Below, one piece after another: positions 22,376 through 63,890 of a stretch of 64,000 bases of DNA. Under the pieces are notes generated by a model. It saw only the letters and a list, made by a program, of their open reading frames with translations. It searched no databases and was not told where the DNA came from. Each line of letters opens with the position of its first letter. Positions within the stretch are counted from its first letter, which is position 1. The stretch covers positions 16,306,001-16,370,000 of the forward strand of contig NC_086124.1 in assembly GCF_963921235.1 (NCBI RefSeq), read 5' to 3'. Source of the DNA: Mobula hypostoma (lineage: Eukaryota). A program made the position numbers and the translations under genes.

Positions 22376-22422
22376 CACCCTCCCATCTTTGACCATCCTA
22401 GTATCCTATTCCTGTTTATTCG

Positions 22423-26172: not shown

Positions 26173-26180
26173 AATTAGTA

Positions 26181-28035: not shown

Positions 28036-28052
28036 TTTGGGTTTTCGGTTTG

Positions 28053-28183
28053 NNNNNNNNNNNNNNNNNNNNNNNNNNNNNNNNNNNNNNNNNNNNNNNN
28101 NNNNNNNNNNNNNNNNNNNNNNNNNNNNNNNNNNNNNNNNNNNNNNNNNNNNNNNNNNNNNNNNNNNNNNNNNNNNNNNNNNN
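28053..28183. other. 131-nt N run
   Basis: Same length as the homologous stretch in the intact copy (12978-13108). Confidence 0.95.
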
Positions 28184-28439
28184 TGGATCGCTTGTTGTAA
28201 TGGGCTAAGCGGGAAGCCTCGCCAGCGATGCGCTCGAAAATATCGTTCACGAACGAGTTCATGATGCTCATGGCCTTGGAGGAGATGCCGGTGTCGGGAT
28301 GAACCTGCTTCATCACTTTGTAGATATAGATGGAGTAACTCTCCTTCCTCAGCCTCCTTCGCTTCTTGCCAGACTTGCCTGATGGTTTTGGCAGCGCTTT
28401 CTTAGCGCCCTTCTTGGGAGCGGGTTTCTGATCGGGCAT
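28068..28439 (-). CDS. H2B: Histone H2B (3' part hidden by N; end inferred)
   Basis: [14 protein letters not shown]...AHYNKRS intact up to the N run. Stop position inferred from the 372-nt length of the paralogs. Confidence 0.88.
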
Positions 28440-29225
28440 TTTTTCTGTCCAGTTCAGAATCAAATAAGCAGAATAATAATCGATGCGCCCTTTAAATAGG
28501 AAGCGCTGACGGCGGTATGCTAATCAAGGAATAGAGAATCAGAGCATGTTCATTGGCTGCTTGGAGAGACGCTTCGCCATCGAAATTATTACGGCAAATC
28601 CTATATTTGGTAATAAGAGGCAACAAATTAAAACGCTCGCTCTACCAAGCAGAAGCCTCTCCAAGTCTGCGGGCCGGGAACCTTGCCAATCCGTGACGGT
28701 TTTCGGTGCAATTTATTGCGGCAGAAGGGATAAGAGGTAGAGGGTTGTGGCTGACGTTAAACAATAGAAAACGTAAAATACAGATGCAGATGAAATAAAC
28801 TCACATTCAGATGAAAAGTTGAAAGAAAATTTATTATCAAAGTACATATATGTCACCATCAAGAAGCATGATTCATTTTCTTGTGTGGATACTCAATAAA
28901 TGGATAACAGAATAATAGGTTTCATTGAATAAATGAGAGATGCTATCAATTTGGGCATTCAACCAGTGTGCAAAAGAAAAAAAATGTTGAAAAAAAAGTG
29001 AATATTAATAATTAATAAGCAATATATATTGAGAATATGAGTTGAAGCGTCCTGAAAGTGAGATCAAGTTGTGGAAACGTTTTAATGATGAAGTGAATTT
29101 ATCCCCTTTGGTTCAAGTGTCTGATGTTTGGGGGATAATAACCACTACTGAAAATAACAGTGTGAGTCCTCATCAAAGTTGCTGGTGAACACAGCAGGCC
29201 AGGCAGCATCTCTAGGAAGAGGTAC

Positions 29226-32789: not shown

Positions 32790-33150
32790 GGCCACCTCTA
32801 GAGCACTGTCTGAGCATCCTCTGGAATAGTCTATAAATCTAGTTAGGCCTTCTCTGGAGTACTGACTAGGCTTCCCCTGGAGTAGAGTCCAAAACTCCAG
32901 TTAGACCTCCTATGGAGTCTGAAAGTCTAGTTTGGACTCCACTGCAGTAGTTTAGGCCTCCTCAAGATAAAAAAAAAACTGGTTAGGCCATGTCTGGAGT
33001 GTAGTCTAGGTCTTCTCTGGAGTAGTCTAAAACTCTAGTTAGACCTCCTCTGGAGTTGAGTCTAAAAGTCTAGTTAGGCCTTCTCTGCAGTAGAGTTTAA
33101 AAGGCAAGTTAGGTCTCCTCTGGAGTGCTGATCAAAAATCTGGTTCAGCC
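32790..33150 (+). repeat. Degenerate ~34-bp minisatellite
   Basis: Paralog of 16620-16975. Confidence 0.78.
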
Positions 33151-33529
33151 TTCTCAAAGTTGAAAGTTCAAAGTACATTTTATTATCAAAGTATGTATAA
33201 ATTATACAATCTTGGGATTCATCTGCTTACAGGCAGCCACAAAACCATATTTTAAAAAAAAAGACAAACACCTAATCTATAGAAAGATTAAAAAAATCAA
33301 ATCATACATGGAAACAATAAAGCAAGCATCAACATTCAGAATGAAATTGAGTCCATAAACCTTGAAGCCAAAGAGGATTAGAGTAAAAAATTCCATTTCG
33401 GCCTCCTCTGGTTTGTAGCCCAAGAGACAAGTTAGGACTCCTCTGGAATACTATATTCAAGTCTGGTTGGTGCATTATAGGAAAAAAAAATGAAGACTTT
33501 GGAGAGGATTCAGAATAGAATTAGGCCAT

Positions 33530-37667: not shown

Positions 37668-38039
37668 TCACTTGGAGCTGGTGTACTTGGTCACTGCCTT
37701 TGTCCCTTCCGACACGGCGTGCTTGGCCAGCTCCCCGGGCAGCAGCAGGCGCACTGCGGTCTGGATCTCCCGAGAGCTGATGGTCGAACGCTTGTTGTAA
37801 TGGGCTAGGCGGGAGGCCTCGCCAGCGATGCGCTCGAAAATATCGTTCACGAACGAGTTCATGATGCTCATAGCCTTGGAGGAGATGCCGGTGTCGGGAT
37901 GAACCTGCTTCATCACTTTGTAGATATAGATGGAGTAACTCTCCTTCCTCAGCCTCCTGCGCTTCTTGCCAGACTTGCCTGATGGTTTCGGCAGCGCTTT
38001 CTTAGCACCCTTCTTGGGAGCGGGCTTCTGCTCGGGCAT
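37668..38039 (-). CDS. H2B: Histone H2B, 123 aa
   Basis: Intact [14 protein letters not shown]...TKYTSSK with stem-loop and promoter. Confidence 0.97.
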
Positions 38040-38739
38040 TTCTGCTGTCGACTTCAAATCCAAATAAGCTGAGTTGTTTCGGAGGGTGACTTAAATAGGA
38101 AGCGCTGGCGGTGGTATGCAAAAAAGGAATGGGCAATCTAAGCATGTTCATTGGCTGCTTGGAGAGACGAATCACCCATCGAATTTATTTCGACAAATCC
38201 TATATTTGGATATCAGCGGGAATAAATTAACATCGCCCTTTCCACCAATCAGAAGCCTCTCCCAGTCTGTAGACCGGGAACCTTGCCAACCCCGTGACAG
38301 TTCTCAATGCCGTTTATTGCGGCGGAAGGGATGACAGGGCACAGAGAGGGTTGCGGCTGACACTAAACAAAGGAAAATGTTAAATACAAATAAACTCACA
38401 TTCAAATGAAAAGTTCAAAGTAAATGTATTATCAAAGTACATATATGTCACCATCAACAAGCATGATTCATTTTTTGCGGGCATACTCAATACATGGACA
38501 ACATAATATTGACCATGAGAGAATAAATGAGAGACCGTATCAATTTGGGCATTCAACCAGTGTGCAAAAGACACAAATTATGCAAATAAAAAAGAAAGAA
38601 ATAATATTAATAATAAATAAGCAATATATATTGAGAATATGATTTGAAGGGTCCCTGAAAGTGAGATCAAGTTGTGGAAACGTCTCAATGCTGAAGTGAA
38701 TTTATCCCCTTCGGTTCAAGAGCCTGATCGCTGAGGGAA

Positions 38740-40500
38740 TTCTCATCCTGTCAAAATGAATACTAACATTGAATTTCCCTTTCTTACAACTGACTCAACC
38801 AGGAAGTTACCCTTTACGGAGTTCTGCACAAGTACTCCCAAGACCCTTTGTACCTTTGATTTGTTTTAATCTTCTCCCTCTTTAGAAAATAGTCAATGTT
38901 TTTTTTTTCCTTCTACCAAATACATTACCATACACTTTCATGCAGTATATTGCATCTGCAAATTCTTTGTCCATTCTCCAAATCTCTCTGTCCTTTTGCA
39001 GACTCCCAGCTTTATGAAACTTCCTGCCTCTTCGCCTACAGTTTTATCATCCATTAACCTGGCCACAAAGACATCAATTCCATCATTCAAATCATTTACA
39101 TGTAACATGAAAATGAGCGGTCTCAAGAATAAACCTTGCAGCCAACCAGAAAAGGCCTCCATGATTCCCCCTCTTTGCCTCCTACTCATCGAACAATCTT
39201 CTATCCATACTGGTACCTTTCCTATAATACCATGGGTTCTTACCTTCATAAGCAACTGCATATTCAGCATCTTGTACAAGCCTTTCAGAAAATCCAAATA
39301 AACAACACCTACTGAATCTCCTTTGTCTATTTTGCTTGTTATTTCCTCAAAGACTTGCAACAGGTTTGTCAGGCAAGATTTCTCCTTTTGAAAACCCTGC
39401 TGACTTTGGCCCAGTTTATCATGTGCCTTCAAGTACCCCGAAAATTCATGAATACCAATGGACTTCAACATCTACCCAACCACTGAGTCAGACTAACTGG
39501 TCTTAAATTTCCTCCCTTCTGCCTCCCTCCCTTCTTAAAAGTGGAATGATATTTTCAATGTTCTGGTTCTCTGGAACCATACCTGAATTAGATTATTAGA
39601 TTAGATTAGATTATGAGGACACTCAGTCCTCATTTATTGTCATTTTGAAATGCATGCATTAAAAGATGATATAATGTTCCTCCAGTATGATATCATAGAA
39701 ACACAAGACAGACCAAGATTAAAACTGACAAAAAACACATAATTATAACATATAGTTACAACAGTGCAAAGCAATACCATAACTTGATAAGAGCAGACCA
39801 TGGGTATGGTAAAAAAAAAGTCTCAAATTCCTGATAGCCCCAACATCTCATGCAGATGGTAGAAGGAAGAAACTCTCCCTGCCATGAGCTTCCAGCGCCG
39901 CAAACTTGCCGATACAGATTCCTGGAAACACCCGGCCACAGTCCAACGCTGAGTCTGTCTGAAAACTTCAAGCCTCCGACACCAAGCACCAAGCACCATC
40001 TCTGCCGAGTGCTTCAACCCCGGCCCTGGCCACCAAGCAACAGGCAAAGCTGAGGACTCGGGGCCTTCCCCTCCGGAGATTTCAGATCACACAGTAGCAG
40101 CGACAGCGAAGCAAGCATTTCAGAAGTTTCACCAGATGTTCTTCCGTACTCTCACATCTGCCTCCATCAAATCAAAATTGTGCATGGTCTTCTACTTGAC
40201 ATATTACAGATATTCATCACTGGAGAGGCCGCACCACCATCTTCTCCTCCTCCTGTAGTGATTCTTGAAAGATCATTATTAACGCCTCCACAATCTCTTC
40301 AGCTAACTCTTTCAGAACCCATTTGGTCCAGTTGATTTATTTACCTTAAGACATTCCAGTTGCCCAAGCACCTTCTCCTTCCAGTATGTCCCCTTACACC
40401 CTCCAGCTTCCATCATACAGCTAATTTCTTTTACAGTGAAGATTGATGCAAAACAGTTTTTTTTAGTTCATCTGTAATTCCCTTGTCCCCCATTACTACC
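38740..40500 (-). mobile_element. Degenerate CR1 LINE with nested non-autonomous element
   Basis: ORF 38938-39471 has SQQGFQKEKSCLTNLL, GDSVGVVYLDF and HGIIGKV..WIED. Confidence 0.8.
39587..40255 (-). mobile_element. Non-autonomous retroposon-like element with (AATCT)n tail
   Basis: Minus strand starts GGAGGAGAAGATGG and ends AATAAA..GAGGACTGAGTGTCCTC-ATAATCTAATCT. Termini shared with 53300-53950; absent at the paralogous site ~47948. Confidence 0.6.
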
Positions 40501-42156
40501 TGATATTGATAAGCTCAGCATGGGTGCATAAAGCAGAACCAATGCAATCATTGATGTGGCACAAGATGAAATGGGCAGCATTACCCATGAAAGCTTGGAA
40601 CATGGACTGTTCCACATTCCTGTCACCAATAGCTCTCTAGCCATCCTTGTTCTCTGCACCACCCCCAATCACCCCCAACCTATCTATTATGGCAATTTCC
40701 CTCTCTCATTTCAGCCCTAAAGAGGGTCTCAGTCTGAAATGCTGACAGTTTATTGATGTCCATAAATGTTGCCTCACCTGGCAAGTTCCTCCAGCATTCT
40801 TATTCAAGTCTTGTTCTGGATTTCCAGCATTTGCAGGTTCTCTCATGTTCAGCAAATTCAGAATTCCGAGTTGCAAAAAGTCTGGGAACCGTCATGCAGG
40901 ATTCTGTAAAATTTAACTTGCAGCTCGGATTGGTGGTAAGCAAGGCAAACGCAATGTTCGCATTCATTTTCAGAGGCATAGAGTATAAAAGCAAGGATAT
41001 ACTGAGATTCCGCATGGTGGAAATTGAGATTAACTCACAAAATGCTGGAAGATCTCAGCTGGATAGACAACATTTCTGGAAAGGAATAAACAGTCAATAT
41101 TTCAGGCTGAGACTTTCTGCACAAAAAGTTACATCAGGAATGTCATGCTGAGGCTCTATGAGGCACTGGTCAGACAGCATTTGGGGTATTGTGAGCAGTA
41201 ATGAGTCCCTTATGTAAGAAAGGATGGAATGCTGAACACAGAACAGCTCATCATAGGAACAGGCCCTATTGCCCACAATATTTTGTCGAACTAATCAAAT
41301 TAGTAACCCAATGACCAAAGAAATGTCTGCCTATATATTACCCGTATCCTTCCTTACATTCACGTACCTATCAAAACTCTCTGAAAATCCCCAATATATC
41401 TGTGTCAACCATCACCATAGTATCCACCACATTCTGTATATAAAAAAAAACCTCACATCTCCTTTGAAATTACCCCCTTACATGTTTGTCTCTGGTATTA
41501 GGGAATTCAACCCTGAGAAGATATGATTTGTCGACTGTACATATGTTCCTCACAATCTTTTACATTTCTGATCTCCCCTCAGTCACTGCCACTCCAAAGA
41601 AAACAACCTAATTTTGCCCAACTTCTCATTGTAGCACAAGCCTTCTAATCCAGTCAACATTCAGAATCAGTTTTAATATCATTGGTATATGTCAGGAAAT
41701 TTGCCATAATCCTCTTTTCTCACCCTCTCCAAAGCCTCAACATATTTCTTATAATGGAGCAAACAGAACTGTATGCAGTACTCCAGATGAGGCAGAACCA
41801 GGGTTCTATAAAGTTCCAGTATAATAGTTAATAGATCATATTCACAGCTATTAAATCACTTAAACAGCAGCAAACATCGTTACCTCTATCTGCTCTATGG
41901 ATAAACTTTTGTGTGAGAAAATTGTGATAAACTGATTGATGTGAGAGGACAAAATGTCCGTGTTGGGGCAATGGGCAGGAACAGCAACAATGGCATTGTA
42001 CGAAGCAGTGGAAAGATTCATCAACAGAAACATTTACCTCCAAGAGTAAAACAAGCTTGTAGCGATCCAATATCAAATTATGAGTACAACTCTTCCCCGG
42101 AAACTAAGTGGCTCTTAAAAGTGCCATTGGGTTTGTCTTATCAGCATTCAGCCGCT

Positions 42157-42709: not shown

Positions 42710-43630
42710 AGGAGACATAAAGTTGGTTATCTAATATTGGCAACATTAGTAGAGTGTTGGGAGCACTTCATTCATAAGGTCTTCAGCTCTGGGTGGATGG
42801 GAAATGTATGGGTACAAAATATTGGCTTGTTTCATGTGAAATATGATCCCTGTGTATCCCTTTCGGTCACTCCATGAATTTTCCCTTTGCATGTGTTGAT
42901 TTAAGCCTTCAAGAAAATATCATGATGAAGAATGATTCTATATCAGTAGCACAGACAGTTCAGTGATAAATGCAAAGCAGACATAATAGATTCTTATACT
43001 CTACACAGATGGTTTGAAAGATCCAGTGTCAGGTCGTTCAGCTGTTTCAGTTTTGTTCCAAAGTTTGAGGTGACTATTAAGAAAAGATTATCAGATAACG
43101 TATCAGAATACACATCAAATGTATTTGCTATCATTTCAGCCTTGGAATGGGCTAAAGAAGTAGGCCCTAATTCTGAATATCCGTGCTTTGATTGTTTTTC
43201 GGTTTTGTTTATTATGTGAAGTGTTGTATGTCATTGGCGATCATAGTCTTTCCATGATCATGACTGGTCGTAGCAAACTTTTCTACCGAAGTAGCTTCTG
43301 TTGCCTTCTTCTGGCCAATGCCTTTACAACTTGCGGGTTTGCCATCTATTAAAACAGGTACATTGAACTACAGCCCAACAATTCTTCTTTTGATTGGACA
43401 ACAGTCATTGAGGTTACAGGATCTAGGCTTGTGTATGCAAGTGGCAGATGTTCCAGCCAACCAATCATTTAAAGTTAAGGATATCAAAGTAGTATTGCCT
43501 TTGGAAATATGAGAGATGAAGGCTATAATTGAAAGGTCAATTTGATCAAAGTGGCAACAAAGTTTGCATAAGAAAAGGATGGCATTTATATCAAATTTAG
43601 CTGGGGAAAACTCATCTGGGAGATGTGTAT
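42710..43630 (+). mobile_element. Old I-group LINE remnant (RNase H region)
   Basis: LYTDG.KD and IISALEWAKEV; paralog of 9290-10635, truncated by a deletion that joins it to the H2A remnant. Confidence 0.62.
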
Positions 43631-44394: not shown

Positions 44395-44766
44395 TCACTT
44401 GGAGCTGGTGTACTTGGTCACTGCCTTTGTCCCTTCCGACACGGCGTGCTTGGCCAGCTCCCCGGGCAGCAGTAGGCGCACTGCGGTCTGGATCTCCCGA
44501 GAACTGATGGTCGACCGCTTGTTGTAATGGGCTAAGCGGGAAGCCTCGCCAGCGATGCGCTCGAAAATATCGTTCACGAACGAGTTCATGATGCCCATGG
44601 CCTTGGAGGAGATGCCGGTGTCGGGATGAACCTGCTTCATCACTTTGTAGATATAGATGGAGTAACTCTCCTTCCTCAGCCTCCTGCGCTTCTTGCCAGA
44701 CTTGCCTGATGGTTTTGGCAGCGCTTTCTTAGCGCCCTTCTTGGGAGCGGGCTTCTGATCGGGCAT
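44395..44766 (-). CDS. H2B: Histone H2B, 123 aa
   Basis: Intact [14 protein letters not shown]...SSKAMGIMN...TKYTSSK. Confidence 0.97.
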
Positions 44767-45544
44767 TTCTTCAGTCGAGTTCAGACTCAAATTAGCAGAG
44801 TAAACTTCGGAGTGCCCATGAAATAGGAAAGGCTGACGTCAGTATGCTAATCAAGGAATGGAGAATCTGAGGATGTTCATTGGCTACTTTGAGAGATGAC
44901 TCACCATCGAAATTATAACGACAAATCCTAGTTTGGATATCAGAGTCTCCACCAATCAGAAGCCTCTCCCAGTCTGCGGGCCGGGAACCTTGCCAACCCG
45001 TGCGGTTTATTGCCACAGAGAGATTAAGAGGGCAGAGGGTTGTTGCTGACATTAAACAAAGGAAAACGTAAAATTCAAACGCAGATAAAATAAACTCAGA
45101 TTCAGTTGAAAAGCTCAAAGTAAATTTATTATCAAATTACACATATGTCACCAAACATGATTCATTTTCTTGCGGGCATACTTAGTACATGGAAAACAAA
45201 ATACTATCCATAATAGAATAAATTGGAGACTATATCAATTTGGCATTCAACCAGTGTGCAAAAGACACAAATAGTGCAATTAAAAAAGAAAGAAAGAATA
45301 TTAATAATAAATAAAGAATATATACTGAGAATGCCAGTTGAAGGGTTCCTAAAAGTGAAATCAAGTTGTGCAAACTTTTCAATGATGAAGAACATTTATC
45401 CACTTTGGTTCAAGATCCTGAATGTTGAGGGATAATAACCATTCCTGAAACTGATGGTGTGACTCCTGAGGCTCTTTTACCTTTGTCCTGATAGCAGACT
45501 GGAATAGAGCATGTCCTGGGTGCTGTTGCACTAATAAAAAATTA

Positions 45545-45735
45545 GTTAGGCTGTCACTGGAGTGGAGTCTAGGCCCCTTCTGGAGTCGTATAAAACTCTA
45601 GTTAGGCCTCCTCTGGATTAGAGTCTAAAGTCTAGTTAGGCCTCCTCTGGATTAGAGTCTAAACTCTAGTTAGGCCTCCTCTGGATTAGAGTCTAAAGTC
45701 TAGTTAGGACTCCTGTGGAGTTGAGCTAAAATTCT
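45545..45735 (+). repeat. 34-bp minisatellite with three near-perfect units
   Basis: TCTAGTTAGGCCTCCTCTGGATTAGAGTCTAAA(G/C) starting at 45597, 45631 and 45665. Confidence 0.9.
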
Positions 45736-46139: not shown

Positions 46140-48200
46140 GGCCATAAGAACAGAAATAGGTCATTCAGTGCATTGATTTTGCTCTGTCATTCCATCATAT
46201 TTGAGTTATTATCCCGGTCAATCACATTCTTCTGCCTTCTCCCTGTAACCTTTGAATCCCTGACTAATCATGCACCTATCATATTCCATTTTAAATATGC
46301 TCAGTGACTTGACCTCCACAACTGTCTGTGATAATGAATTCCACTGAATAAGTATTAACTGGCATAAGAAAGTCCTCCTCACCTCTGTTCTCAATAGCAA
46401 TCTCTCTATTCTGTGGTCATGCCATTTGGTCCTAGACTCACCCACTACATGAAACATCCTCACCACATCTACTGTACTTGTGCCTTTTAATATTTGATAG
46501 GCTTCAATTAGATCACCCCTCGGTCTTCTGAACTTCAATGAGTTGAGATCCAGAGCCGTCAAATGCACAAAATACATTCATGCTTTCACTCCTGGAATCA
46601 TTCTTGTGAACCACTTCAGGACCCTCTTGAATGCCAGCACAACTTTTTTTCAGATACTAGGCTAAAAACTGCTCACAATACTGCAAGTGCAGGCCTTATA
46701 AAAAAAAAAGCCTCCGCTTTACATCCTTGCTTTTATGTTTTTGTCCTGTCAAAATGAATACTAACATTTAATTTCCCTTCCTTACCTCTGACTCAACCGA
46801 CAAGATGTGCTTCATGGAATCCTGCACAAGTACTCCCAAGTCCCTTTGAATCTTCTCCCTCTTTAGAAAATAGTCTATGCTTTCTTTCTTCTATCAAAGT
46901 ACATGACCAAACACTTCAATACATTATCTAAAATGTCTTTGTCCATTCTCCAAGTCTGTCAAGGTCCTTTTGCAGACTTGCACCTTCTTCAAAACTTCCT
47001 GCCTCTCTATCTATATTTGTATCATCCATTAATAGGACCAAAAGGAGCTGCAGAGGGTTATAAATCTAGTTAGCTCCATCTTGGGTACTGGCCTACAAAG
47101 TACGCAGGACATTTTCAGAGTCTCAAAAGATAGCATCCATTATTAAGGACCTCCAGCACCCAGGGCATGCCCTGTTCTCAGTGTTACAATCAGGTAGGAG
47201 GTACATAAGCCTGAAAGCACATGCTCAGCGATTCAGGAAACACTCCTGAAGTGGCTCTTCTGCCATTCAATTCCTAAATGGACATTGAATCTTTGGACAC
47301 TAACTCACTTTTTAAAATTTAAAGTACTCCTCTTTTTTTGCACTTAAAAAAGATCTATTCAATGCATGTACACTGTAATTGATTAGTCTGATTTTGAATC
47401 TGAACCTGGCCACAATGCGGTCAATTCCATCATACGAATCATTTACATATAACATGAAAATGAGTGGTCTCAACACGAAACCTTGCAATAAACCACTAGT
47501 CACTGGCAGCTAACCAGAGAAGAGCTCTGTTATTCACATTTTTTGCTTCCTGTTCTTTGGCCAGTCTTCTATCCATACTGGTACCTTTACGATAATACCG
47601 CGGGTTCTTACATTCTTAACCAACCGCATGTTCAGGAACTTGCATAAACCTTTCCGAAAATCCAAATAAACAACATCTACTGACTCTCCTTTGTCTATTT
47701 TGCCTGTTATTTCCTCAAAGAATTGTAACAGCTTTGTCAGGCAAGATTTCTTCTTTTGAAAACCCTGTTAACTTTGGCCTATTTTATCATGTGCCTTCAA
47801 ATACCCCCAAAATTCATCAGTAACTATGGTCTCCAACAACTACCCAACCACTGAAGTCAGACTATAATTTCCTTCCTTCTTCCTCCCTCCCATCTTAAAA
47901 GTGGAATGACGTTTTCAAATTACCAGTTCTTTGGAACTGTTCCTGAATCTAGTGATCCTTGAAAGATCATTATTATTGCCTCCACAATCTCTTCAGCTAA
48001 CACTTTCAGATCCCATTTGGTCTAGCTGACTTATCTACCTTCAGACATTCCAAACACCTTCTCGCTCCAGTAGCAAGTGCATTCACTTATGTCCCCTGAT
48101 ACTCTCCAACGTCCATCATACTGCTAATTTCTTCTACAGTGGAGACTGATGCAAATTAATTATTTAGTTGATCTGTAATTCCCTTGTCCCCTGTTACTAC
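46140..48200 (-). mobile_element. Degenerate CR1 LINE with nested Rex1-like fragment
   Basis: FRRPRGDLIEAYQILKG and TSGLLQG.VLRPLIF; paralog of 33530-34970. Confidence 0.78.
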
Positions 48201-48486
48201 CTGATTTTGATCAGCTCAGCATGGGTGCACGAAGCTATTGGCCAGAAGAAAATGCAGTCTAATCAAGGACAAGGGAAGCAGACAATCCACTTGTCTTCGT
48301 TTGACCCTTTTTGTGGACTCTGAACTGATTCTTGCTGTTGGATAATCTAATCAGAGCAACTGAATGTGGACACAGGAAGCTTCCAGTAATGATCTGCTAA
48401 ACCCGAGAGCATTCTCAAACAAGTAGCCACTTGTTATGTAAAGGGCGTGGACTCTGATCTGATTTTTTTTTAACTCTGGAACAATG

Positions 48487-48768
48487 TTTTTTTTTACAAA
48501 ATATACTTTATTCAAAAATAAAATTATGTACAATAAAACATGCAATGACTGTCAATCCTTTACAGACGTTTCCATTATGGTCTATACATTTCCACACTTT
48601 TAGCCACACACATGGCACTCTGTTGTTTCACCTTTCCACACCATTGTTGAGGGGTATACTCCCTGCCACCTGACCCCTCCCACACCCGTGGGAGAAGAAC
48701 CCTAAACCGTGGTCCTTCCCCACTGGGCACTTGCGGTGGGTGCACCAAGTTTCAGCGCGTCCCTCAGA
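48487..48768 (-). mobile_element. Tx1-like LINE 3' end
   Basis: Minus strand LRDALKLGAPTASAQWGRTTV*, then a 3' UTR with AATAAA and an A tail. Confidence 0.65.
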
Positions 48769-48852
48769 GCAACAAACCTGAGACCATTCTCAGAGGAGTA
48801 GCTACTTGTCATGTAAAATGCCAGAACTACAATCTGCAGTCTCATTAAACTC

Positions 48853-49373
48853 TGTCAGGGTTGCCTCAGTTTACTGGTTTGGACCAGTCAGAGTGTAAAG
48901 GCAGAAATACACAGGGCTGGGGTGGGCATAGCCATGAGGCAATGTTGGTTGTAGCCCTGTACAATGATCAGTAAGAAGGTGACCCAGGTAGGTCAGGTGA
49001 CCTTGAGCCAGTGGGATGGAGATGTAATGGTTCAATTGATGAGGAACAGTATATGACCCTGCAGTTCTAAATACGCAGGTGTGATAACTCTCCAGCAGCC
49101 AGAGACCAACCATTGCGGATAAGGAGGACCCCACGGACACATGGAGATTGGGACCATGAGGAATCCCTGTCCAGTGTAGTCTCCTTGTCCGTGTAATACC
49201 TTCTCTCTTCATTGACTGTTCATGGAGTGTCAGATGTTCTAGTATGGAGCACACAGGTATGATTGGAGTGTGCACCAGCATGCTTTTTAGTTGAAATAAT
49301 AAAGTTACTTGTTGGCAAATATAGATTTTCTGCGCCTTACTGATCTTTATTACAGGGGGCAATTCTTGTAACA
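48853..49373 (+). repeat. Putative retroviral 5' LTR
   Basis: Begins TGT and ends TAACA with imperfect inverted ends; AATAAA at 49298-49303; a PBS follows 4 nt later. The 5' boundary is inferred because no second LTR is present. Confidence 0.6.
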
Positions 49374-49377
49374 GAAT

Positions 49378-49395
49378 TGGCTTCCCTGGGTGGGC
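49378..49395 (+). promoter_or_regulatory. Primer binding site complementary to tRNA-Asn
   Basis: TGGCTTCCCTGGGTGGGC(TCG) versus TGGCGTCCCTGGGTGGGC expected from the vertebrate tRNA-Asn(GTT) 3' end; one mismatch. Confidence 0.8.
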
Positions 49396-49479
49396 TCGTG
49401 GATAAATCTCTTTGTTCAGCAGGAGACTCGAGTTGGGCCACGTGTGTGAGGTACAGAGATCTGGGGCTGGGTATTTAGT

Positions 49480-52400
49480 GGTTACTGACCCAGGATGAAG
49501 AATTCAGGAAATTCTGCAAGTCCAGAGGACTTGGATTGTTTTGATTCGAGGGGATACCTCCTGAAATACGTACTGGGGGAGGTGGCTGCAATATGAGGAG
49601 TTTGCTGGTCACCCTGGCTGTGAAGGGAAAACTGCTGGTGATGCCCTATGGAAAATCACCCAAGGGAATCTGTTGAGCAGGAAGTTTAAACAATTACAAA
49701 AAACAGTAGCAGTTGGTTGTTTTATTGAAGATTTGATAGAGTTATGACAAAATGCTAAAGCAGAATGGCATAGGTTAGAATCAGAAAATAAATGTTGGTA
49801 GAAAGCAGAAGCCCAGCAAAATATATTACCACAGGAAATCTAAAAATATCGCCATAAATCTGAGGCCGAGCGAGATAGGTTCGAAGGAGAACATAGAAGG
49901 CTCGAAAGGAGTTAGAAACCTTTAGAGAAAAGGTTACTGATTTATAGGATCAGAGAGGCATAGACTTGATGCATATGAACCAGTTTCAGTTAAAATGTGA
50001 GAAATTACTTAAATGGAAATGTAAACTAGAGAAGCAGCTGAACTAGAAAAGGATGAAGTAGAAGGATTAAGGAAACAGTGAAGTGACTTAAAGACAGCTA
50101 TGAATGTGATTCAGAAATCAGCACAAGTATTGCACAATCATGCAAAGTATTTAAAGCATATTCAAACACTGCAGGACCAACTTGCATAGCGAGGTATAGT
50201 ATGTGCTTTTGGATCTGAAAAAGGGAAAGGTGAATATGGAGATATTGATTGGCATTTGTAGATGAAGCTTCTAGAAACAGTTACGATAATTACGGGGCAT
50301 CATTTACCGAGCAAATCCCGCCTACACCATACCAACTGGAGCCAGTCTCACTGTCTGCACGATTGGCACCCCTAGTTACTATCAGAGAGGGGATCAGGGG
50401 AGCAAACCAAAAGCAGAATATAATATACACCACACCGTTTGGGGTACAGCACCTTAGAGATTTTGCTGAGGATATCCAGAGGTGTGCTCGGAGACTAATC
50501 TCGAGAGCTTTTCTAAGCAACTAATCATCAGAGAATAATACACTGCCGAGATGACTCTGAGGATAGGAAATTGAGTATATTGTGTTTACACACAAATTTA
50601 CACTCAGCTTTACCAGGTATACAACGACATGGTGGGGAACAAGTGAAGAACTGAAAAACGCAATAACGACTGTTATGGGTGTTAACAGAAGGGACCCAGT
50701 AAACGCGCCAGCCAAATGTTACCAGAGAAAAGGTCAACATCTCACTGCATTTGCATACCATTTATGAACTATATTCCAAGGGGATTATGGGACAGCATTA
50801 GAGCGGGACCATTTAGGACCAGAGGGCTCAAATAGTTGATTGAGGACACTGGTGTCTCACTGTATCGATGAATCTAAAAAGGCTATGGAAATGTTTGATC
50901 CTTTCTGAACCCACACATACTGAGGCATGTTTACAAAGGAAAATGTGTAGAGCGTAGGAAAAGGAGATACAAAGCCCAACTAAACTCCCTAATGGGAAGG
51001 TGACGCCCATTAAAAGTCAGTCAACTGCATGAAGAAATGAGGGTAGGGGACCCACAATAAGGGCCTCCCTGCCACACTATCAAGGGGCAAGGAAGAGCAG
51101 AGGAAATGGAACAGGCAGAACTGAAAGTGGAGTAATTCAATGCTATAGCTGTGGTCAACAGGGGCACAATAAGAGAGAAGGTCCAAGCCTGAGACAAGAA
51201 AGAGCAGAACAATGTGGTTTGCCCTTGGAGGGGCCAGAAAGACAGAGCCCATAAAATAACATGGCTGAGACCCCACCATCCAGGGAACTGTACCCTAAGC
51301 TTCAATGACAGTATCAGGCCTCACCAACACGGGTGTGTGACAAAACGTGGGATGAAACCGGAAGATCTCCAGTGAGTGGTAGAGTCAGAGGATGCCCTGT
51401 TACCTTTTTATGGGATACAGGAGGATCCCGAACCACAGTGAACACCACTAATATAAATAATGCAAATTGAAAGATACAAGGTAAAATTATCCTAAGTGGA
51501 TTCACAGGCCATTCACAATTTGGACATGTGAGTGTAGTATTGGAAGTCAGAATTGGAGACAGATCATTGAAACAGTCAATAGTGTTGGCGGAATTACCCA
51601 AGGAGCAGGACCATATACAAGGGTGTGATTATATGGCCAAAGCAGGGCTTTGTTTTGACTGAGTTAATTGTATGATTTGGCAGATGCCAACATGGGCATG
51701 AATATCATACACAACATGCAGATCCCAGCAGGAGTATATCAGGATAGGAAGATGTACAATGGGTGAAATGTGGAGAAAACTGGAGGAGATGAGCAATGAT
51801 CAATAACAGCCCCGAGTGTAGCAACTAACTGTGGACAAACAGAATAAAAGAGCGCTATGGTTCACAGTTTTGGACATAAGTAATGGATTTTTGTTTATCC
51901 CACTAGAAAGACAGTGTCAATTCACATTTGCATTTACCTTTCAGGGACAGCAGTATACATGGATTGCCCTACCACAGGGGTTCCATGATTCCCCGTCCGT
52001 ATTTCACCAATGTTTAGATGAAGGGTTAAAATGGTTTTCAACACCCAAATGCTTGGTGCAATATGTAGATGATCTCCTCCTGTAGACGGAAACCAAGCAG
52101 AACCATTTTAATTGGGACAGAATGTAAACTCTAAAAAAGCACAGGTAATGAAGCAAGAAGTTAGTTATTTGGAAATGATCCTGACACTGGGAAGAAGAGA
52201 AATTGAGAAGCAAAGAGTAGAATCGGTTATGAAACGGCATATTCTCCGAGACCTGAAAGGGCTACGTTCTTTTCTGGGGCTGGCAGGACACTGTAGGGAT
52301 CACATTGATGGATTTTTCATGAAAGCAGCTTCTTTAGTGGAGTTACTGAAAAAAAAATGTGGAGTGGGAATGGAAATAAGAACACACCCAGGCCATCACA

Positions 52401-52870
52401 GTTCTGAAACAAGCACTGGCTGCTGTACCTGCATTAAAAACCCCAAATCCGAATGAGTCATTCTCATTCGAGGTGGCAAAAAATGATATCACCCTCTCAG
52501 CAGTGCTGTTACAGGAGACACATGGGAATTCAAGACCAGTCATGTATGCATCACACATGCTCTCTCCGGTAGAACAGGGGTATACTGTATGTGAAAACCA
52601 CTTGTTAGCAGTTTTCAGTGTGGTACAACATTTTGCCTACATAGTGGGACTTAATTCACTTACAATACTGACAGAACATACCCCCACACAATTACTGTTA
52701 GCTGAAAGGATTAAAGATGGTTCAGTAAGCAAAAACAGAATTGCTAGATAGACACTGCTGCTGCAAGAAAGAAATATTAGTGTAAAGTGAGTAAACACTA
52801 CCACTATATGTACCAAGGAACTGAACATGAGTGTCAAATTATGATAGGAAATGATCCCAAGGACATATTT
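49480..52870 (+). pseudogene. Degenerate endogenous retrovirus gag-pro-pol (spuma/lokiretrovirus-like)
   Basis: Coiled-coil remnants (~49860-50190); protease FLWDTGGS (DTG at 51414-51422); RT WFTVLDISNGF..FAFTFQGQQYTW.ALPQGFHDSP..YVDD (52062-52073); LRSFLGLAG; RNase H-like tether RPVMYAS..LS..E...CE.HLLA..RIAR. Many stops and frameshifts; no integrase, env or 3' LTR. Confidence 0.85.
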
Positions 52871-53299
52871 GTATCAAAACAAAAATTAGGGAGTAGAAGT
52901 AGATCAGATAGAGTAATGACTGAGAACAAAGACAACTGGCTTGTCTGCTTCCCCTGTCCTTGATTAGACTACAGTTTCTTCTGGCCAACAAAGCAGAACC
53001 AATGCAGTCATTGATATGACACAAGATAAGACAGACAGTATTACCAGTGAAGGCAAGGAACATGGACTGTTCCACGTACCTATCACCAATCACTTTCCAG
53101 CCAGTCTTTGTTCCTACACACCCACCACCCCAACCTATCTACTACGGCAATTTCCCTCTTTCATTTCAGTCCTAAAGAAGTGTCTCTGCCCGAAACGCCA
53201 GCAGTTTATTCACGTCCATAGATGTTGGCTGACCTGCTGAGTTTCCAGCAGTTTTCATTCAAGTGTTGCTCTGGATTTCCAGCACCTGCAGGAAATATG

Positions 53300-53950
53300 C
53301 AGGAGGAGAAGATGGCGGCGCAACGCAGCGTGCGCGGCCGTTCTGAATGATATCGTATATGTTAAATAGGGGGCCGTGCACAATCCTAATTTGATGGAGA
53401 CAGCCATGAAAAGCACAGAGGAACACCTGGAGAAACTTCTGAAATGCCCACTTCACTGCCACTGCTACTGTGCAATCGAGAGGGGAAGGCCCCAAATCCT
53501 CGGCTTTGTCTATTGCCTGTTGCCGGGCCGGGGTCAAAGCACTCGGCAGAGATGGTGCTCGATGCTCAGTGTTGGAGAGCTGGTCAGAGGCTCTGAGTTT
53601 TCGGACGCACTCGGAGTCAGACTATGGTCGGATGCTTCCAGGATGTTGCATCAGCAAGTTTGCGGCGCTGGAGGTTCACCGTCTGCGTGAGATGATGGGA
53701 CTTTCAAGAGGCTTTGAGATTTTTTACCGTGCCCATGGTCTGTTCTTATCAAATTACGGTAATGTTTTGCACTGTTGTAACTATATGTTATAATTATGTG
53801 GTTTTTGTTAGTTTTTCAGTTGGTTTGTCATGTGTTTCTCTGATATCATTCTGGAAAAACATTGTATTACTTCTTAATACATGCATTACTAAATAACAAT
53901 AAAAGAGGACTGTGTGTCCTCATAATCTAATAATTTAATAATCTAATCTC
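53300..53950 (+). mobile_element. Non-autonomous retroposon-like element with (AATCT)n tail
   Basis: Starts GGAGGAGAAGATGGCGGC, ends AATAAAAGAGGACTGTGTGTCCTCATAATCT...; absent at the paralogous site ~40835. Confidence 0.6.
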
Positions 53951-55260
53951 TCGTCTTTACCAAATTCTGAATTCAGAGCTGCAAAAAGTCTGGGAACCCT
54001 CGTGAAGGATTCAGTAAAATTTGCTTGCAGCTTCAATTGGTAGTAAGGAAGACAAATGCCATGTTAGCATTCATTCCAGAGGACTTGGATATAAAAGCAA
54101 TGATATATTAAGATACTGCATGGTGGAAACTGAGATTAACTCATACAAAATGTTGGAAGATCTCAGCTGTATAGGAAGCATCTCTGGAAAGAAATAAACA
54201 TTCAATGTTTCAGGCTGAAACTTCCTGCAGAAAAATATTACGTCAGGAATGTCAGCTGAGGCTCTGTGAGGCACTGGTCAGACAGCATTTGGGGAACTGT
54301 GAGCAGTTATGAGTCCCTTATGTAAGAAAGTATGGAATGTTGAACATTGAACAGCACATCACAGGAGCAGGCCCTTTGTCCCAAAATATTTTGTCGAACA
54401 AATCACATTAGTAATCAAATGACAAAGGAAATGTCTGCCTACATATTACCCATATCCTTCCATACATTCACGTACCTATCCAAACTCTCTGAAAAGACCC
54501 TAATATATCTGCCTTGACCATTACCATAGCATCCACCACACTCCGTATAAAAAAAACCTCATATCTCCATTGAAATGACCCCCTTACATGATTGTCACTG
54601 GTATTAGGCAATTCAACCCTGAGTAGATGTGATTTGTCTACTCTATCTATGTCTCTCACAATCTTATAAACCTAGCAGATCTCCTCACAGCCACTGTGTC
54701 TCCGAAGAAAACAACCAAATTCTGTCCAACTTCTCATTGAAGCACATGCCCTCTAATTCAGACAACATTCAGAATCAGGTTGAATATCTCTGGCATATAT
54801 TGGGAAAATTGTCCTAAACCTCTTTTCTCACCTACTCCAAAGCCCCAACATTCTTCTAATAATGGGGCAACCAGAACTGTATGCAATACTCCAGATGAGG
54901 CAGAAGCAGATTTCTGTAAAGTTGAAACATAATAGTTAATACATTGTATTTACAGCAATTAAAGCTCTTCAGCAACAGCAAACATCTTCATCACTATTTG
55001 CTCTATGTGTAAAGTTCTGTGTGAAAAGAAAACATCACACAAGCTGACCTAAGTGAGAAGGCAAAATGTCTGTGTTGGATCAGTCAGCAGGAACGGCGAC
55101 AACGGGATTGTACTGAACATAAACATTCACCTCCAAGAGTAAAACCTTCAAGACAAGCTTGCAGTGATCTAATATTGAATTATGAGTACAACTCTTCCAC
55201 GGAAACTGTATGTGGCTCTTAAAAGGCCTGGTGGGTTTGTCTTATCAGCCCTCAGCCACT

Positions 55261-60794: not shown

Positions 60795-61358
60795 TTTCAA
60801 CAAGCTCAGCAAAACCCAAAGAATGAGGAAATGCTCCAGCCCTCGGCCTTCTTGAATGTCCTGTGGCCATGCAATGAGACATTCAGGATTGCTACAACAA
60901 CGATTAAGGTCATTGAAGAACAAATAAACCAACGCGAGAGCCGACCTATTTACCAATCAAAAGCGCGGAAGTAAACTCTGACCCGCCGAAAATAAACCGA
61001 AACTTGAAAACAGCCCGCCAAAAATCCTTTGTTCCAACCGAATCTAAAATCAAATCATTACGGATCTGCTTGTGCAATAATTTTCCGCATTAACCCATTA
61101 CTGAAGCTAATTATGCAGAACGGTCTGGGTATTTCACTTAACGATATCTCTACTCAAGAGAGAAAAAAATGTTTTCTCATTTGCTTTCCCTGATCATTGT
61201 GTGAAAGGCATCATGTTACAACCGAGTTGCTCTTTTCAAAATACGGCTGGAGTTTAGCCTGGAATTTTGACAAATTATTGCGAATGTACCGTCTGGCATT
61301 GAAATTTAATTCAAAGAATATGACGAAAAAATGCAGCTCTGTTCATGAAACAGTGAGT

Positions 61359-61374
61359 GGCTCTTAAAAGGGCC
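61359..61374 (-). terminator. Histone 3' stem-loop with one mismatch
   Basis: GGCCCTTTTAAGAGCC (C-A mismatch at stem position 4). Confidence 0.85.
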
Positions 61375-61391
61375 TTTGGGTTTTCGGTTTG

Positions 61392-61522
61392 NNNNNNNNN
61401 NNNNNNNNNNNNNNNNNNNNNNNNNNNNNNNNNNNNNNNNNNNNNNNNNNNNNNNNNNNNNNNNNNNNNNNNNNNNNNNNNNNNNNNNNNNNNNNNNNNN
61501 NNNNNNNNNNNNNNNNNNNNNN
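61392..61522. other. 131-nt N run
   Basis: Same length and same flanks as 28053-28183. Confidence 0.95.
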
Positions 61523-61778
61523 TGGATCGCTTGTTGTAATGGGCTAAGCGGGAAGCCTCGCCAGCGATGCGCTCGAAAATGTCGTTCACGAAAGAATTCA
61601 TGATGCTCATGGCCTTGGAGGAGATGCCGGTGTCGGGGTGAACCTGCTTCATCACTTTGTAGATATAGATGGAGTAACTCTCCTTCCTCAGTCTCCTGCG
61701 CTTCTTGCCAGCCTTACCTGATGGTTTCGGCAGCGCTTTCTTAGCGCCCTTCTTGGGAGCAGGCTTCTGATCGGGCAT
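61407..61778 (-). CDS. H2B: Histone H2B (3' part hidden by N; end inferred)
   Basis: [14 protein letters not shown]...AHYNKRS intact up to the N run. Confidence 0.87.
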
Positions 61779-63890
61779 TCCTCCTCTCCAATTCAGACTC
61801 AAATAAGCAGTATTTACGTCGGAGCGCCTGTTAAATAGGAAACGCAGACGACTGTATGCTAATCAAGGAATAGATTTTCAAAGAATGTTCATTCGCTACA
61901 TTGGGAGACGAATCACCATCGAAATTATTACTACAACTCCTATATTTGGCTATCAGAGGTTACAAAAGCAGTCGCACGCTCCACCAATCAGAAGCCTTTC
62001 CCTGTCTGCGGACCGGGAAGCTTGCCACCAGTGACAGTTCTACGTGGCGCTTATTACGACAGCAGGGATAGGAGGGTAGAGAGAAAAGTTGTGGCTGACA
62101 TTAAACATAGGAAAACGTAAAATGGAATTGCAGGAGAAATAAACTCACATTCGGATAAAAAGTTCAGTTAATTTATTATCAATATAAATATATGTCACCA
62201 TCAAGAAGCACAATTCATTTTCTGGCGGGCAAAATAACCATTCCTGTCTTGATCACTGACTGAGAAGACAGCATGTCCTCCTGGGTAGTGTTATACTAAT
62301 AAAAAATTAGTTTGGCCGTCTCTGGAGTGGAGTCTAGACCTCTTCTGGAGTCGTATAAAACTCTAGTTGGGCCTCCTCTGGCGTGCTGTTCAAAAATCTA
62401 GTTCAGCCTTTTCAAAGCTTAAAGTTCGAAGCACATTTTACTATCAAGGTATGCATAAATTATTCAATCTTGGGGTTTGTCTGCTTACAGGCAACCACAG
62501 TATCCAATATTAAAAAAGATCAACACCCAATCTACAGAGAGATAAACAAAACAAATCAATTTGTGAAAACAATAAAGCAAATATCACCATTCAGAATGAA
62601 ATTGAGTCCATAAACCTTGAAGCCAAAGAGGATTAGAGTATAAAAGTCCAGTTCAGCCTCCTCTGGAAAACTACATCTAGTCTGGTTGTTGCATTATAGG
62701 AAATAATTGAAGACTTTGGAGAGGATTCAGAATAGATTTAGACAATAAGAACAGAAATAGGTCATTCGGTCCATCGATTTTGCTCTGTCATTCCATCATA
62801 TCGGAGTTAATATCCCTGTCAATCACGTTTTTCAGCATTCTCTCTGTGACCTTTTGTCTCCCTGACTAATCAAAAACCTATATCGCAAAGCCGGAAAAAC
62901 AAGCTTTTCCCTCAGTGTTTACTCTTCCCTGTCTGGCCTGCTGAGTTCCTCCAGCATTTTGTGTGTGTTGCAAGCATGTGAAGAAGATTGGTTGATAGGC
63001 AATGAGCAGAGTAGGAATAAAGGAGGCCTTTTATGGTTGCCCGATCCTCTTAATAGCTGCTAGGAAAATTATTAACACTTTCCTTAAACAGGAATTTTTC
63101 CAGGTGTCTTCAAATCTGTGGCTGTAAAACCCCTACTTACTAACTACAGGCATAGATCAAAACTTCCCTTCCTGGGCAAGTTTCTTGAGAAAGACATATT
63201 TAAACAGCACAACTTTTTGAATGAGCCCATTACATCAATACCAATCAGTTGGAATACATCCATATTTATCCCTTCTACCAGCACTTGTCCTGTAACCTGG
63301 GTAATTGAAGTGATTGACAAGACATTTCTAAAATACCATTAGGCACTCTGCTTTCACCACTTTCTCTGGTAGAGTGTTCCAGTTACTCACCCTCAATTTA
63401 CACCCCCCCCCCACCATGTCCTGCAGGTCTATCTACTTCTGATATGGGGGAAAGTTCTCTGCAACCTACCCGATCTCAACCCCTGATTATTTACTACACC
63501 TAAATTATCTCCCCTCTTCAGCATGGATCATGGCTGGGTCAGTGAATGTTTGCCATCTACATCAAATATTGTCTGGATGATAATATTTTAACACCGAACA
63601 ACAAATTTGCTGATAGCAGCAAGATTGGGGATGTAGTGGACAATGAGGAAGCTATTGAAGCTTGCAGTGTGATTTGGGAATTATTGCGTGAATGTGGAGT
63701 CGCAGGTAGCGAGCCCACAGAGAGAGTTCTAAGCACATTGGCCTTCATAAATAAAAACATTGGGTACAGAAGTTGGGATGGGGTAATGAAAGGAGATTAT
63801 GAGAGTAAATACATTTTTGCCAGGAAAATATACAATTAATCATGCTCTCCAAATGCTCACAGACGGCAAAATATTGCAGACACTGTGAGT

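What the first reader, a model, noticed from the sequence alone, without database searches (positions are those of the whole stretch)
48236..52990. 4.75-kb element with Ginger-like inverted termini and 4-bp TSD enclosing half a retrovirus
Seen: 48236-48301 and 52925-52990 are 66-bp inverted repeats (59/66 identical). The right end reads ...GGCCAACA and the left TATTGGCC..., consistent with TGT...ACA termini with one substitution. Both sides are flanked by AAGC. The paralogous unit at ~40523-40541 reads GGGTGCATAAAGCAGAACC with one AAGC and no element, so this is an insertion. Most of the interior is LTR-PBS-gag-pro-pol, cut off shortly before the right TIR. Established: TG...CA termini, TIRs of tens of bp and 4-bp TSDs characterise Ginger DNA transposons, whose transposase is related to Gypsy/retroviral integrase. 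Inference: either a ~0.5-kb non-autonomous TIR element later hit by an ERV and a Tx1 end, followed by a deletion (simpler), or a DNA transposon that moved with retroviral cargo (more novel).
Basis: partly seen in the sequence, partly recalled or inferred. Interest (0 to 1): 0.8.

Follow-up and report, generated by a model that had tools for sequence, protein, structure and literature searches.

The report
Half a retrovirus between inverted repeats
A 4.75-kb insertion in a devil-ray histone gene cluster holds the decayed front half of an endogenous retrovirus between two 66-base inverted ends and a 4-base target duplication; the structure is real and odd, but I could not tell whether it is a DNA transposon with a retrovirus fragment inside or a misbuilt retroviral DNA.

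Summary
Window 48236-48301 and 52925-52990 are inverted repeats, 59/66 identical, and occur nowhere else in the window. AAGC flanks both ends. A paralogous unit (about 80% identical, 40256-40837) runs straight through one AAGC, so this is an insertion. The ends read TAT.../...ACA.

Inside, on the + strand, are gag, protease, reverse transcriptase and the connection domain of a gamma/spuma-like endogenous retrovirus. It has at least 27 disruptions. It stops just before RNase H, 55-120 nt from the right arm. There is no integrase, env, second LTR or transposase.

The window comes from Mobula hypostoma, a devil ray, not a frog. 'Tx1 end' and 'LTR-PBS' could not be verified.

The Ginger label fits in form only. 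AAGC matches neither the Ginger1 nor the Ginger2 target preference, and no partner is visible.

Three readings remain:
- A TIR element with a nested retrovirus, later deleted in place (0.35).
- A retroviral DNA whose 3' end is a copy-back of its own 5' end, inserted by retroviral integrase (0.3).
- A TIR transposon that moved with retroviral cargo (0.2).

The deciding test is a census of the arm in the Mobula genomes. I could not run it because their DNA was not retrievable.

The parts
48232..48235 (.). Left copy of the 4-bp target site duplication (AAGC)
   Evidence: The paralogous site 40522-40540 has one AAGC.
48236..48301 (+). Left 66-bp terminal inverted repeat arm; starts TATTGG
   Evidence: 59/66 identical to the reverse complement of 52925-52990.
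48302..48478 (+). Non-coding stretch next to the left arm. It holds a 21-nt motif twice (48313-48333 and 48447-48467) and copy 1 of an 81-nt unit (48399-48478).
   Evidence: No Pfam or Rfam match. No other copy in the window.
48479..48773 (-). Block of about 295 nt with AATAAA and an A-run on the minus strand; looks like the 3' end of a polyadenylated retrocopy.
   Evidence: Read. No similarity to the window's non-LTR elements or to ORF2 proteins.
48774..48854 (+). Copy 2 of the 81-nt unit (74% identical to 48399-48478)
   Evidence: E 2e-10. It is more diverged than the arms (21/81 against 7/66 differences, Fisher p 0.02), so it is unlikely to be a target duplication made after the insertion.
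48855..49494 (+). Presumed retroviral LTR remainder and leader (AATAAA at 49298-49303). The LTR start and the primer binding site are not determinable here.
   Evidence: No second LTR. The antisense 163-aa ORF has no homologue.
49495..51300 (+). gag (bounds approximate), broken: at least 17 disruptions on the cheapest reading path (9 stops, 8 frame changes)
   Evidence: The C-terminal part, 50672-51179, is homologous to the gag gene (zf-CCHC) of the closest relative's contig L001. Counts.
51300..51800 (+). Protease (bounds approximate), broken: at least 4 stops
   Evidence: An aspartic-protease D-T-G motif is visible. Homology to the L001 gene 2 product covers 51516-51800, and to the P0071 protease end from 51492. 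Counts.
51800..52870 (+). pol: reverse transcriptase, thumb and connection (RT_RNaseH) domain. Broken (at least 2 stops and 4 frame changes) and cut off before the RNase H domain.
   Evidence: RVT_1 at 1.9e-15 and RT_RNaseH at 1.4e-15. Best relatives are P0001 (55% identity) and P0071 (PR-RT-connection-RNaseH-IN), aligned to about residue 580-607 of 1218. Closest solved RTs are foamy virus and murine leukaemia virus types. Counts.
52871..52924 (+). 54 nt not assignable: either the last pol linker codons or a remnant of the outer element
   Evidence: No significant protein or DNA match.
52925..52990 (-). Right 66-bp terminal inverted repeat arm; ends CCAACA
52991..52994 (.). Right copy of the 4-bp target site duplication (AAGC)
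40522..40540 (+). Paralogous empty site in the neighbouring duplicated unit

Best explanation
One DDE-type insertion with a 4-bp staggered cut placed a DNA with inverted identical ends into a degenerate repeat between histone genes of Mobula hypostoma. The insertion came after the local unit had duplicated.

Most likely, by a narrow margin, the ends belong to a short non-autonomous terminal-inverted-repeat element of the integrase-related kind. By this I mean TG..CA-type ends and a 4-bp duplication, that is, Ginger-like in the broad sense. A gamma/spuma-like endogenous retrovirus later integrated into it. A polyadenylated retrocopy landed in the left part. A deletion then removed everything from the start of RNase H to a point at or near the inner edge of the right arm. 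The whole structure is now dead.

Shown: the arms, the duplication, the empty paralogous site, the retroviral content and where it is truncated, and the decay. Inferred: the order of events, and that the arms do not belong to the retrovirus.
For: - Arms, TSD and empty site.
- The arm ends exactly at the duplicated AAGC on both sides, so both arms were termini when the DNA was inserted.
- TIR length, TGTNR-type end and 4-bp TSD are the formal Ginger features (PMC2836005; PMC10045372).
- Nested insertions are demonstrably common in this window. A block of about 650 bp sits at different places and in opposite orientations in the two paralogous units. The flank is itself a mosaic of repeat fragments.
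- The repeat stops abruptly at about 66 nt. That is expected if a deletion set the present inner edge of the right arm.
- No direct copy of the right arm lies near the leader, so the arms are not ordinary LTR-end repeats.
Against: - No second copy of the arm was found anywhere I could search, so a family is not shown.
- The target AAGC fits neither the Ginger1 nor the Ginger2 preference.
- No transposase lies in the element or the window.
- DNA transposons make up only 2.9% of this genome and retroviral LTR elements 0.15-0.63% (bioRxiv 10.64898/2026.10.27.761883). A retrovirus landing in a rare integrase-type TIR element, and then being cut back almost to its arm, is a chain of unlikely events.
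- The ends and the 4-bp duplication are exactly what the enclosed retrovirus's own class of integrase makes (3-6 bp for retroviruses). Under this reading that is a coincidence.
- No separate LTR start can be pointed to between the left arm and the leader.
Confidence: 0.35

Rival explanations
1. The ends are retroviral. The left arm is the 5' terminus (U3 start) of this retrovirus's DNA. The right arm arose when the growing plus strand left its template at the start of RNase H, annealed back on its own 5' region about 66 nt in, and copied to the end. This is the copy-back architecture known from defective viral genomes. The resulting DNA had a U3-type end on both sides. Retroviral integrase inserted it, giving the TG..CA-type ends and the 4-bp duplication. 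It would be a one-off dead end, not a transposon family.
For: - One event explains several features. The right arm runs exactly to the terminus. The repeat has a sharp inner edge. The viral sequence is sense-oriented from the left arm and ends at or within 55-120 nt of the right arm.
- The pol frame stays open across the junction.
- The ends and duplication length match a class-I-type integrase.
- An 81-nt unit next to the left arm recurs next to the leader. This is easiest to explain if 48236-49376 is one LTR carrying a nested retrocopy.
- The arm is single-copy wherever I could look.
- At least 27 disruptions in about 3.4 kb is in the range expected from the arms' 10.6% divergence, if the arms were identical at insertion.
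Against: - I know of no described provirus of this architecture; that statement rests on my own knowledge.
- The LTR would be long, about 1.1 kb (about 0.8 kb without the retrocopy).
- That the left arm is the LTR start is not shown. The 3' LTR is missing and no other copy was in reach.
- The relatives fetched (L001, L003, L004) are too distant to compare LTR ends.
- Completing the second strand of such a molecule takes extra steps.
Confidence: 0.3
2. This is a terminal-inverted-repeat DNA transposon of the integrase-related kind that already carried the retroviral fragment when it arrived, as cargo. The retrovirus entered a copy elsewhere and was cut down there, for example by faulty gap repair after excision. 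The composite was then moved here by a transposase supplied in trans.
For: - The arm, TSD and empty-site evidence is the same as for the best explanation.
- Integrase-related TIR elements are known to carry foreign fragments: GingerRoot does so, and it has relatives in fish (PMC6839031).
- The 81-nt units are more diverged than the arms. That is easy to explain if the interior predates the last insertion.
Against: - No second copy, no autonomous partner and no transposase were seen.
- The target sequence is unlike those of Ginger1 and Ginger2.
- GingerRoot/IS3EU makes 6-bp duplications with TA..TA ends and 100-150-bp TIRs.
- Nothing in this one copy separates arrival as a composite from nesting in place.
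Confidence: 0.2
3. The structure is a secondary rearrangement of an ordinary provirus. An inversion or deletion, or a repair event, happened to put an inverted copy of the first 66 nt at the right end.
For: The region is rearrangement-prone: it has duplicated units, mosaic repeats, and a 5.3-kb inverted pair of young non-LTR elements.
Against: - The right arm ends exactly at the element/flank boundary and the 4-bp duplication is intact. A random breakpoint would hit that base only by luck.
- The leader region holds no direct copy of the right arm, so the LTR has no natural 66-nt terminal inverted repeat.
Confidence: 0.1

Closest known systems
Ginger2/TDD and Ginger1 DNA transposons (non-autonomous copies)
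   Same: TIRs of tens of bp (40-270 for Ginger1, 50-180 for Ginger2), a TGTNR-type terminus and a 4-bp target duplication (PMC2836005).
   Different: The target AAGC is not CCGG/CCGT (Ginger1) and does not lie in RTATAY (Ginger2). There is no integrase-like transposase here or in the window. No family was demonstrated. In the papers read, vertebrates appear only through the domesticated Gin-1 and Gin-2 genes.
Class I (gamma/epsilon-like, ERV1-type) endogenous proviruses
   Same: gag-pro-pol order. The RT is closest to foamy virus and murine-leukaemia-type RTs. The relative P0071 has the full retroviral PR-RT-connection-RNaseH-IN layout. The ends are TG..CA-type and the duplication is 4 bp.
   Different: There is no second LTR, and no RNase H, integrase or env. 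The 3' end is an inverted copy of the 5' end, not a direct one.
IS3EU/GingerRoot and Pack-type TIR elements that carry foreign fragments
   Same: These are integrase-related TIR elements with TA or TG ends that carry captured sequence. Relatives are reported in fish. The left end here reads TA.
   Different: GingerRoot and IS3EU make 6-bp duplications and have 100-150-bp TIRs and TA..TA ends. A 6-bp reading here needs one mismatch and ends offset by 2 nt.
Copy-back defective viral genomes (an analogy of architecture only)
   Same: A 5' part of the genome followed by the reverse complement of its own 5' terminus, running to the very end.
   Different: These are described for RNA-virus replication, not for retroviral DNA (my own knowledge). 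Whether the left arm is the viral terminus is untested.

Membership tests
Ginger1 | TIRs of about 40-270 bp | tested here: met
   66-bp arms, 59/66 identical. Definition.
Ginger1 | Termini TGTNR | tested here: inconclusive
   The right arm reads TGTTG. The left arm reads TATTG, one mismatch.
Ginger1 | 4-bp TSD of sequence CCGG or CCGT/ACGG (99% of 112 elements) | tested here: not met
   The length is 4 bp, but the sequence is AAGC.
Ginger1 | Gypsy-integrase-like transposase (YPYY, H2C2, DDE, GPY/F) in the element or in an autonomous partner with the same TIRs | tested here: not met
   No rve or integrase domain lies between the arms on either strand or elsewhere in the window. A partner elsewhere in the genome is not testable with these tools.
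Ginger2/TDD | TIRs of 50-180 bp and a 4-bp (or 5-bp) TSD | tested here: met
   Definitions.
Ginger2/TDD | Preference for AT-rich RTATAY targets | tested here: not met
   The target context is GCATAAAGCAGA, with no RTATAY. This is a preference, not an absolute rule.
Any DNA transposon family | Several copies with paired TIRs, each with its own TSD | not testable with these tools
   There is one copy in the 64-kb window. Viral and metagenome collections gave 0 hits. DNA of the Mobula assemblies was not retrievable.
IS3EU/GingerRoot | 6-bp TSD, TA..TA termini, TIRs of 100-150 bp | tested here: not met
   The best reading is a 4-bp TSD. The ends are TA and CA. The TIR is 66 bp.
Endogenous retrovirus, class I-like | gag, pro and pol with a retroviral RT plus connection domain | tested here: met
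Endogenous retrovirus, class I-like | Two direct LTRs, with RNase H, integrase and env | tested here: not met
   There are no direct repeats of LTR size. pol ends before RNase H. There is no further pol or IN in the window.
Endogenous retrovirus, class I-like | TG..CA ends and a 4-bp TSD | tested here: met
   TSD range for retroviruses.
DIRS-like retrotransposons | Inverted terminal repeats with a tyrosine recombinase and no TSD | tested here: not met
   A TSD is present. There is no recombinase domain. The RT is of retroviral type. The DIRS definition rests on my own knowledge.

The most novel reading that the evidence does not exclude
The arms are tied to the retrovirus itself, in one of two ways. 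(a) A retroviral DNA with a copy-back 3' end, so that it has U3-type ends on both sides, was inserted by retroviral integrase. (b) An integrase-related TIR transposon in a cartilaginous fish moves with half a retrovirus as cargo. Either would be a natural intermediate form between LTR retroelements and Ginger-type DNA transposons.
Probability: 0.45. Interest if true: 0.7.

Novelty: new member of a known kind. Interest (0 to 1): 0.42.

Why it matters
Ginger-type DNA transposons and LTR retroelements share an integrase, a terminus pattern and a duplication length. How one kind gives rise to the other is an open question (PMC2836005). A retroviral fragment bounded by inverted copies of a TG..CA-type end and a 4-bp duplication is the sort of object that question needs, provided the ends prove to be retroviral or the composite proves to have moved.

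If it is only a retrovirus nested in an unrelated short TIR element and then deleted, it is routine genome debris. One search of the ray genomes with the 66-bp arm separates these outcomes.

Tried and rejected
- **Other copies of the arm.** None in the window at low stringency. A 13-14-mer at 43306-43319 and a 29-mer shared with four histone-promoter-side repeats do not extend and are chance matches. Viral contigs gave 0. Metagenome contigs gave 0 in two scans.
- **Reaching LTR copies through the 163-aa antisense ORF of the leader.** No homologue.
- **Reaching the source genome through window proteins.** The non-LTR ORF2 is not on record. Two H2B proteins are on record only in GCA_963921235.1, but no DNA was returned because the file is too large. 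A third H2B is not on record. The shared H2B P0238 hits M. hypostoma and M. birostris, again without DNA.
- **Relatives of the retrovirus.** L001, L003 and L004 are too distant at DNA level to compare LTR ends. P0071 came without DNA.
- **Extension of the inverted repeat beyond 66 nt.** Not significant.
- **An LTR with a natural 66-nt terminal inverted repeat.** Rejected, because no direct copy of the right arm lies near the leader.
- **The 81-nt units as a target duplication of the retrocopy.** Unlikely, because they are more diverged than the arms.
- **Other families.** DIRS, IS3EU/GingerRoot and Polinton were rejected on TSD and termini.
- **RNA and primer site.** Rfam gave nothing above chance. 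No tRNA genes were found in the window or in the loci, so the primer binding site stays unverified.
- **The missing half.** No retroviral RNase H, IN or env anywhere else in the window.


Full report
**1. The observation**

The two arms are real. Window 48236-48301 and 52925-52990 are reverse complements with 59 of 66 positions identical. The repeat finder reports 64 nt at 91%. A 34-nt probe from the arm, allowing three mismatches, finds only these two places, and shuffles give none.

The differences between the arms are 4 transitions and 3 transversions. The repeat does not continue inward. Alignments anchored at the inner edges score no better than random window segments.

The left end reads TATTGG. 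The reverse complement of the right end reads TGTTGG. AAGC lies directly outside both ends.

**2. It is an insertion**

The flanks 47950-48235 and 52990-53292 are colinear with 40256-40534 and 40530-40837 at about 80% identity. The two alignments overlap on a single AAGC. Two more distant relatives of the same stretch, at 7002 and 23114, also carry one AAGC.

The shared arrangement of blocks shows that 39056-41387 and 47403-54495 are duplicated units, not merely copies of one transposon. The blocks include a minus-strand RT fragment followed by plus-strand material. The insertion therefore came after that duplication.

A 6-bp reading of the duplication needs one mismatch and ends that are offset by 2 nt. 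The 4-bp reading is the symmetrical one.

**3. Where the window comes from**

The window holds three H2B genes. Two of their exact proteins are on record only in NCBI assembly GCA_963921235.1, on a 37.48-Mb contig and with matching neighbours. That assembly is Mobula hypostoma (PMC13188829). A protein named 'histone H2B 1/2-like [Mobula hypostoma]' is 99% identical to the third.

The setting is therefore a histone gene cluster of a devil ray, full of repeats. In that genome DNA transposons make up 2.9% and retroviral LTR elements 0.15-0.63%.

**4. The interior**

On the + strand I found these genes, in order:
- A gag C-terminal part, homologous to the zinc-knuckle gag of the closest relative's contig.
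- A protease with a D-T-G motif.
- A reverse transcriptase (RVT_1, 1.9e-15) and the RT_RNaseH 'connection' domain (1.4e-15).

The best relative among 1.8 billion representatives is only 55% identical. It is P0001, from a metagenome contig.

A fuller relative, P0071, has protease, RT, connection, RNase H, integrase zinc finger, integrase core and a C-terminal integrase domain. The window aligns to it only up to about residue 580-607 of 1218, just before RNase H. The closest solved structures are foamy-virus and murine-leukaemia-type RTs, well ahead of lentiviral ones.

All three genes are broken. On the cheapest reading path the minimum counts are:

| Gene | Disruptions | Stops | Frame changes |
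|---|---|---|---|
| gag | at least 17 | 9 | 8 |
| protease | at least 4 | 4 | 0 |
| RT plus connection | at least 6 | 2 | 4 |

Several things are absent:
- There is no RNase H, integrase, env or second LTR.
- No further retroviral coding sequence lies anywhere in the window.
- No transposase-like domain lies on either strand between the arms.

**5. The left 1.2 kb**

After the arm comes non-coding sequence with a 21-nt motif present twice. An 81-nt unit (48399-48478) recurs at 48774-48854 at 74% identity. Between the two units lies a block of about 295 nt with AATAAA and an A-run on the minus strand, so it looks like a polyadenylated retrocopy. I could not tie it to Tx1 or to any element in reach.

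The units are more diverged than the arms (p 0.02). They are therefore probably not a duplication made by that retrocopy after the main insertion.

An AATAAA at 49298-49303 and the following leader fit a retroviral R/U5 region. Neither the LTR start nor the primer binding site can be fixed without a second LTR, another copy or a tRNA reference.

**6. What it is**

Both arms end exactly at the duplicated AAGC, so they were the two termini of the DNA that was inserted. The enzyme made a 4-bp staggered cut. TG..CA-type ends with 3-6-bp duplications mark retroviral and LTR integrases and their DNA-transposon relatives. Three readings fit.

(a) A short integrase-related TIR element was later hit by the retrovirus and a retrocopy, and was then cut back by a deletion. 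This is the conventional reading. Nesting is plainly common here. However, it needs a rare element type, a rare retroviral hit into it, and a deletion ending next to the arm. It also treats as coincidence the match between the ends and the enclosed retrovirus's own integrase class.

(b) The left arm is the 5' end of the retroviral DNA and the right arm is a copy-back of it. One aberrant synthesis event, followed by normal integrase action, would explain several features:
- the exact terminus;
- the sharp inner edge of the repeat;
- the sense orientation of the viral sequence;
- the truncation at the junction;
- the duplication length.

I know of no precedent. The key premise, that the arm is the LTR start, is untested.

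(c) The same kind of TIR element arrived here already carrying the fragment as cargo.

My rough count of expected occurrences, from the genome fractions, puts (a), (b) and (c) within an order of magnitude of each other. That estimate is inference, not a result. I rank them 0.35, 0.30 and 0.20, with 0.10 for a secondary rearrangement of a normal provirus and the rest unassigned.

**7. Comparison with known families**

- **Ginger1 and Ginger2.** The form fits both. The target sequence does not: Ginger1 uses CCGG or CCGT and Ginger2 prefers RTATAY. No transposase or family is shown, so I do not file the element as a Ginger.
- **IS3EU/GingerRoot.** These have relatives in fish and carry foreign fragments. 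They make 6-bp duplications with TA..TA ends and longer TIRs.
- **DIRS.** Excluded by the duplication and the lack of a recombinase.
- **The interior.** It is a member of the class-I-like endogenous retroviruses by domain content, but it is not a complete provirus.

**8. What could not be done**

I could not run it, for these reasons:
- The collections I can scan by DNA gave no hit.
- The Mobula assemblies are on record, but their DNA was not returned.
- The retroviral relatives I could fetch are too distant.

**9. Slips**

- In my reasoning I twice recalled from memory short primer-binding-site or LTR-end strings of known retroviruses. I stopped, used them in no tool call, and drew no conclusion from them.
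- Those bounds coincide with ends of open frames listed by the ORF listing. I list no such places in this report.

**10. Verdict**

The 'Ginger' label is unproven and three mechanisms remain open. Interest is moderate until the genome-wide census is done.

Noticed in passing
window 12993-13388, 37668-38063, 44395-44790 (all minus strand): Three histone H2B genes (Pfam Histone, about 1e-23). The window is a histone gene cluster of Mobula hypostoma. Two 163-aa ORFs of equal length (27972-28463 and 61311-61802) span the two N runs and sit where further H2B genes are annotated. I left the masked stretches alone.
   Followed up: partly
window 2575-7892 (+) and 22195-27547 (-): Two copies of a young non-LTR retrotransposon, 97.8% identical, in inverted orientation about 14 kb apart. 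The first has an intact ORF1 (375 aa, zinc knuckle) and an intact ORF2 (1256 aa, endonuclease-RT-RNase H). The closest proteins on record are from teleosts (62-69% identity) and from an unnamed assembly, GCA_977066305.1 (76% protein identity, 78% DNA identity over 5 kb). That is high for a ray-teleost comparison and hints at horizontal transfer.
   Followed up: partly
window 39589-40255 and 53293-53947: A block of about 650 bp with a TAGATTA-like simple-repeat tail sits at different positions and in opposite orientations in the two paralogous units. This points to independent insertions of one short retroposon family after the unit duplicated.
   Followed up: partly
window 16757-16965, 32998-33155, 45593-45730: The same 34-35-bp tandem repeat (2-4 copies, 75-92% matches) recurs three times, roughly once per cluster unit. 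Its nature is unknown.
   Followed up: no
window 48871-49362 (minus strand): An open 163-aa frame runs antisense through the presumed LTR and leader of an otherwise heavily broken element. It has no Pfam family and no homologue among 5.8 billion proteins. About two such ORFs are expected by chance in the window.
   Followed up: yes
window 13440-13468, 28515-28543, 44842-44870, 61851-61869: A four-copy conserved stretch lies next to the H2B genes and is probably promoter-side sequence. It shares an 11-nt core with the arm. The match does not extend and is taken as chance.
   Followed up: yes
L001 (JGI metagenome 3300026616 contig, 3070 bp): The closest relative of the retrovirus's pol lies on a metagenome contig. 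That contig also carries a fragment 73% identical to a non-LTR element of this window (15517-15797), so it is probably fish host DNA within a metagenome.
   Followed up: no
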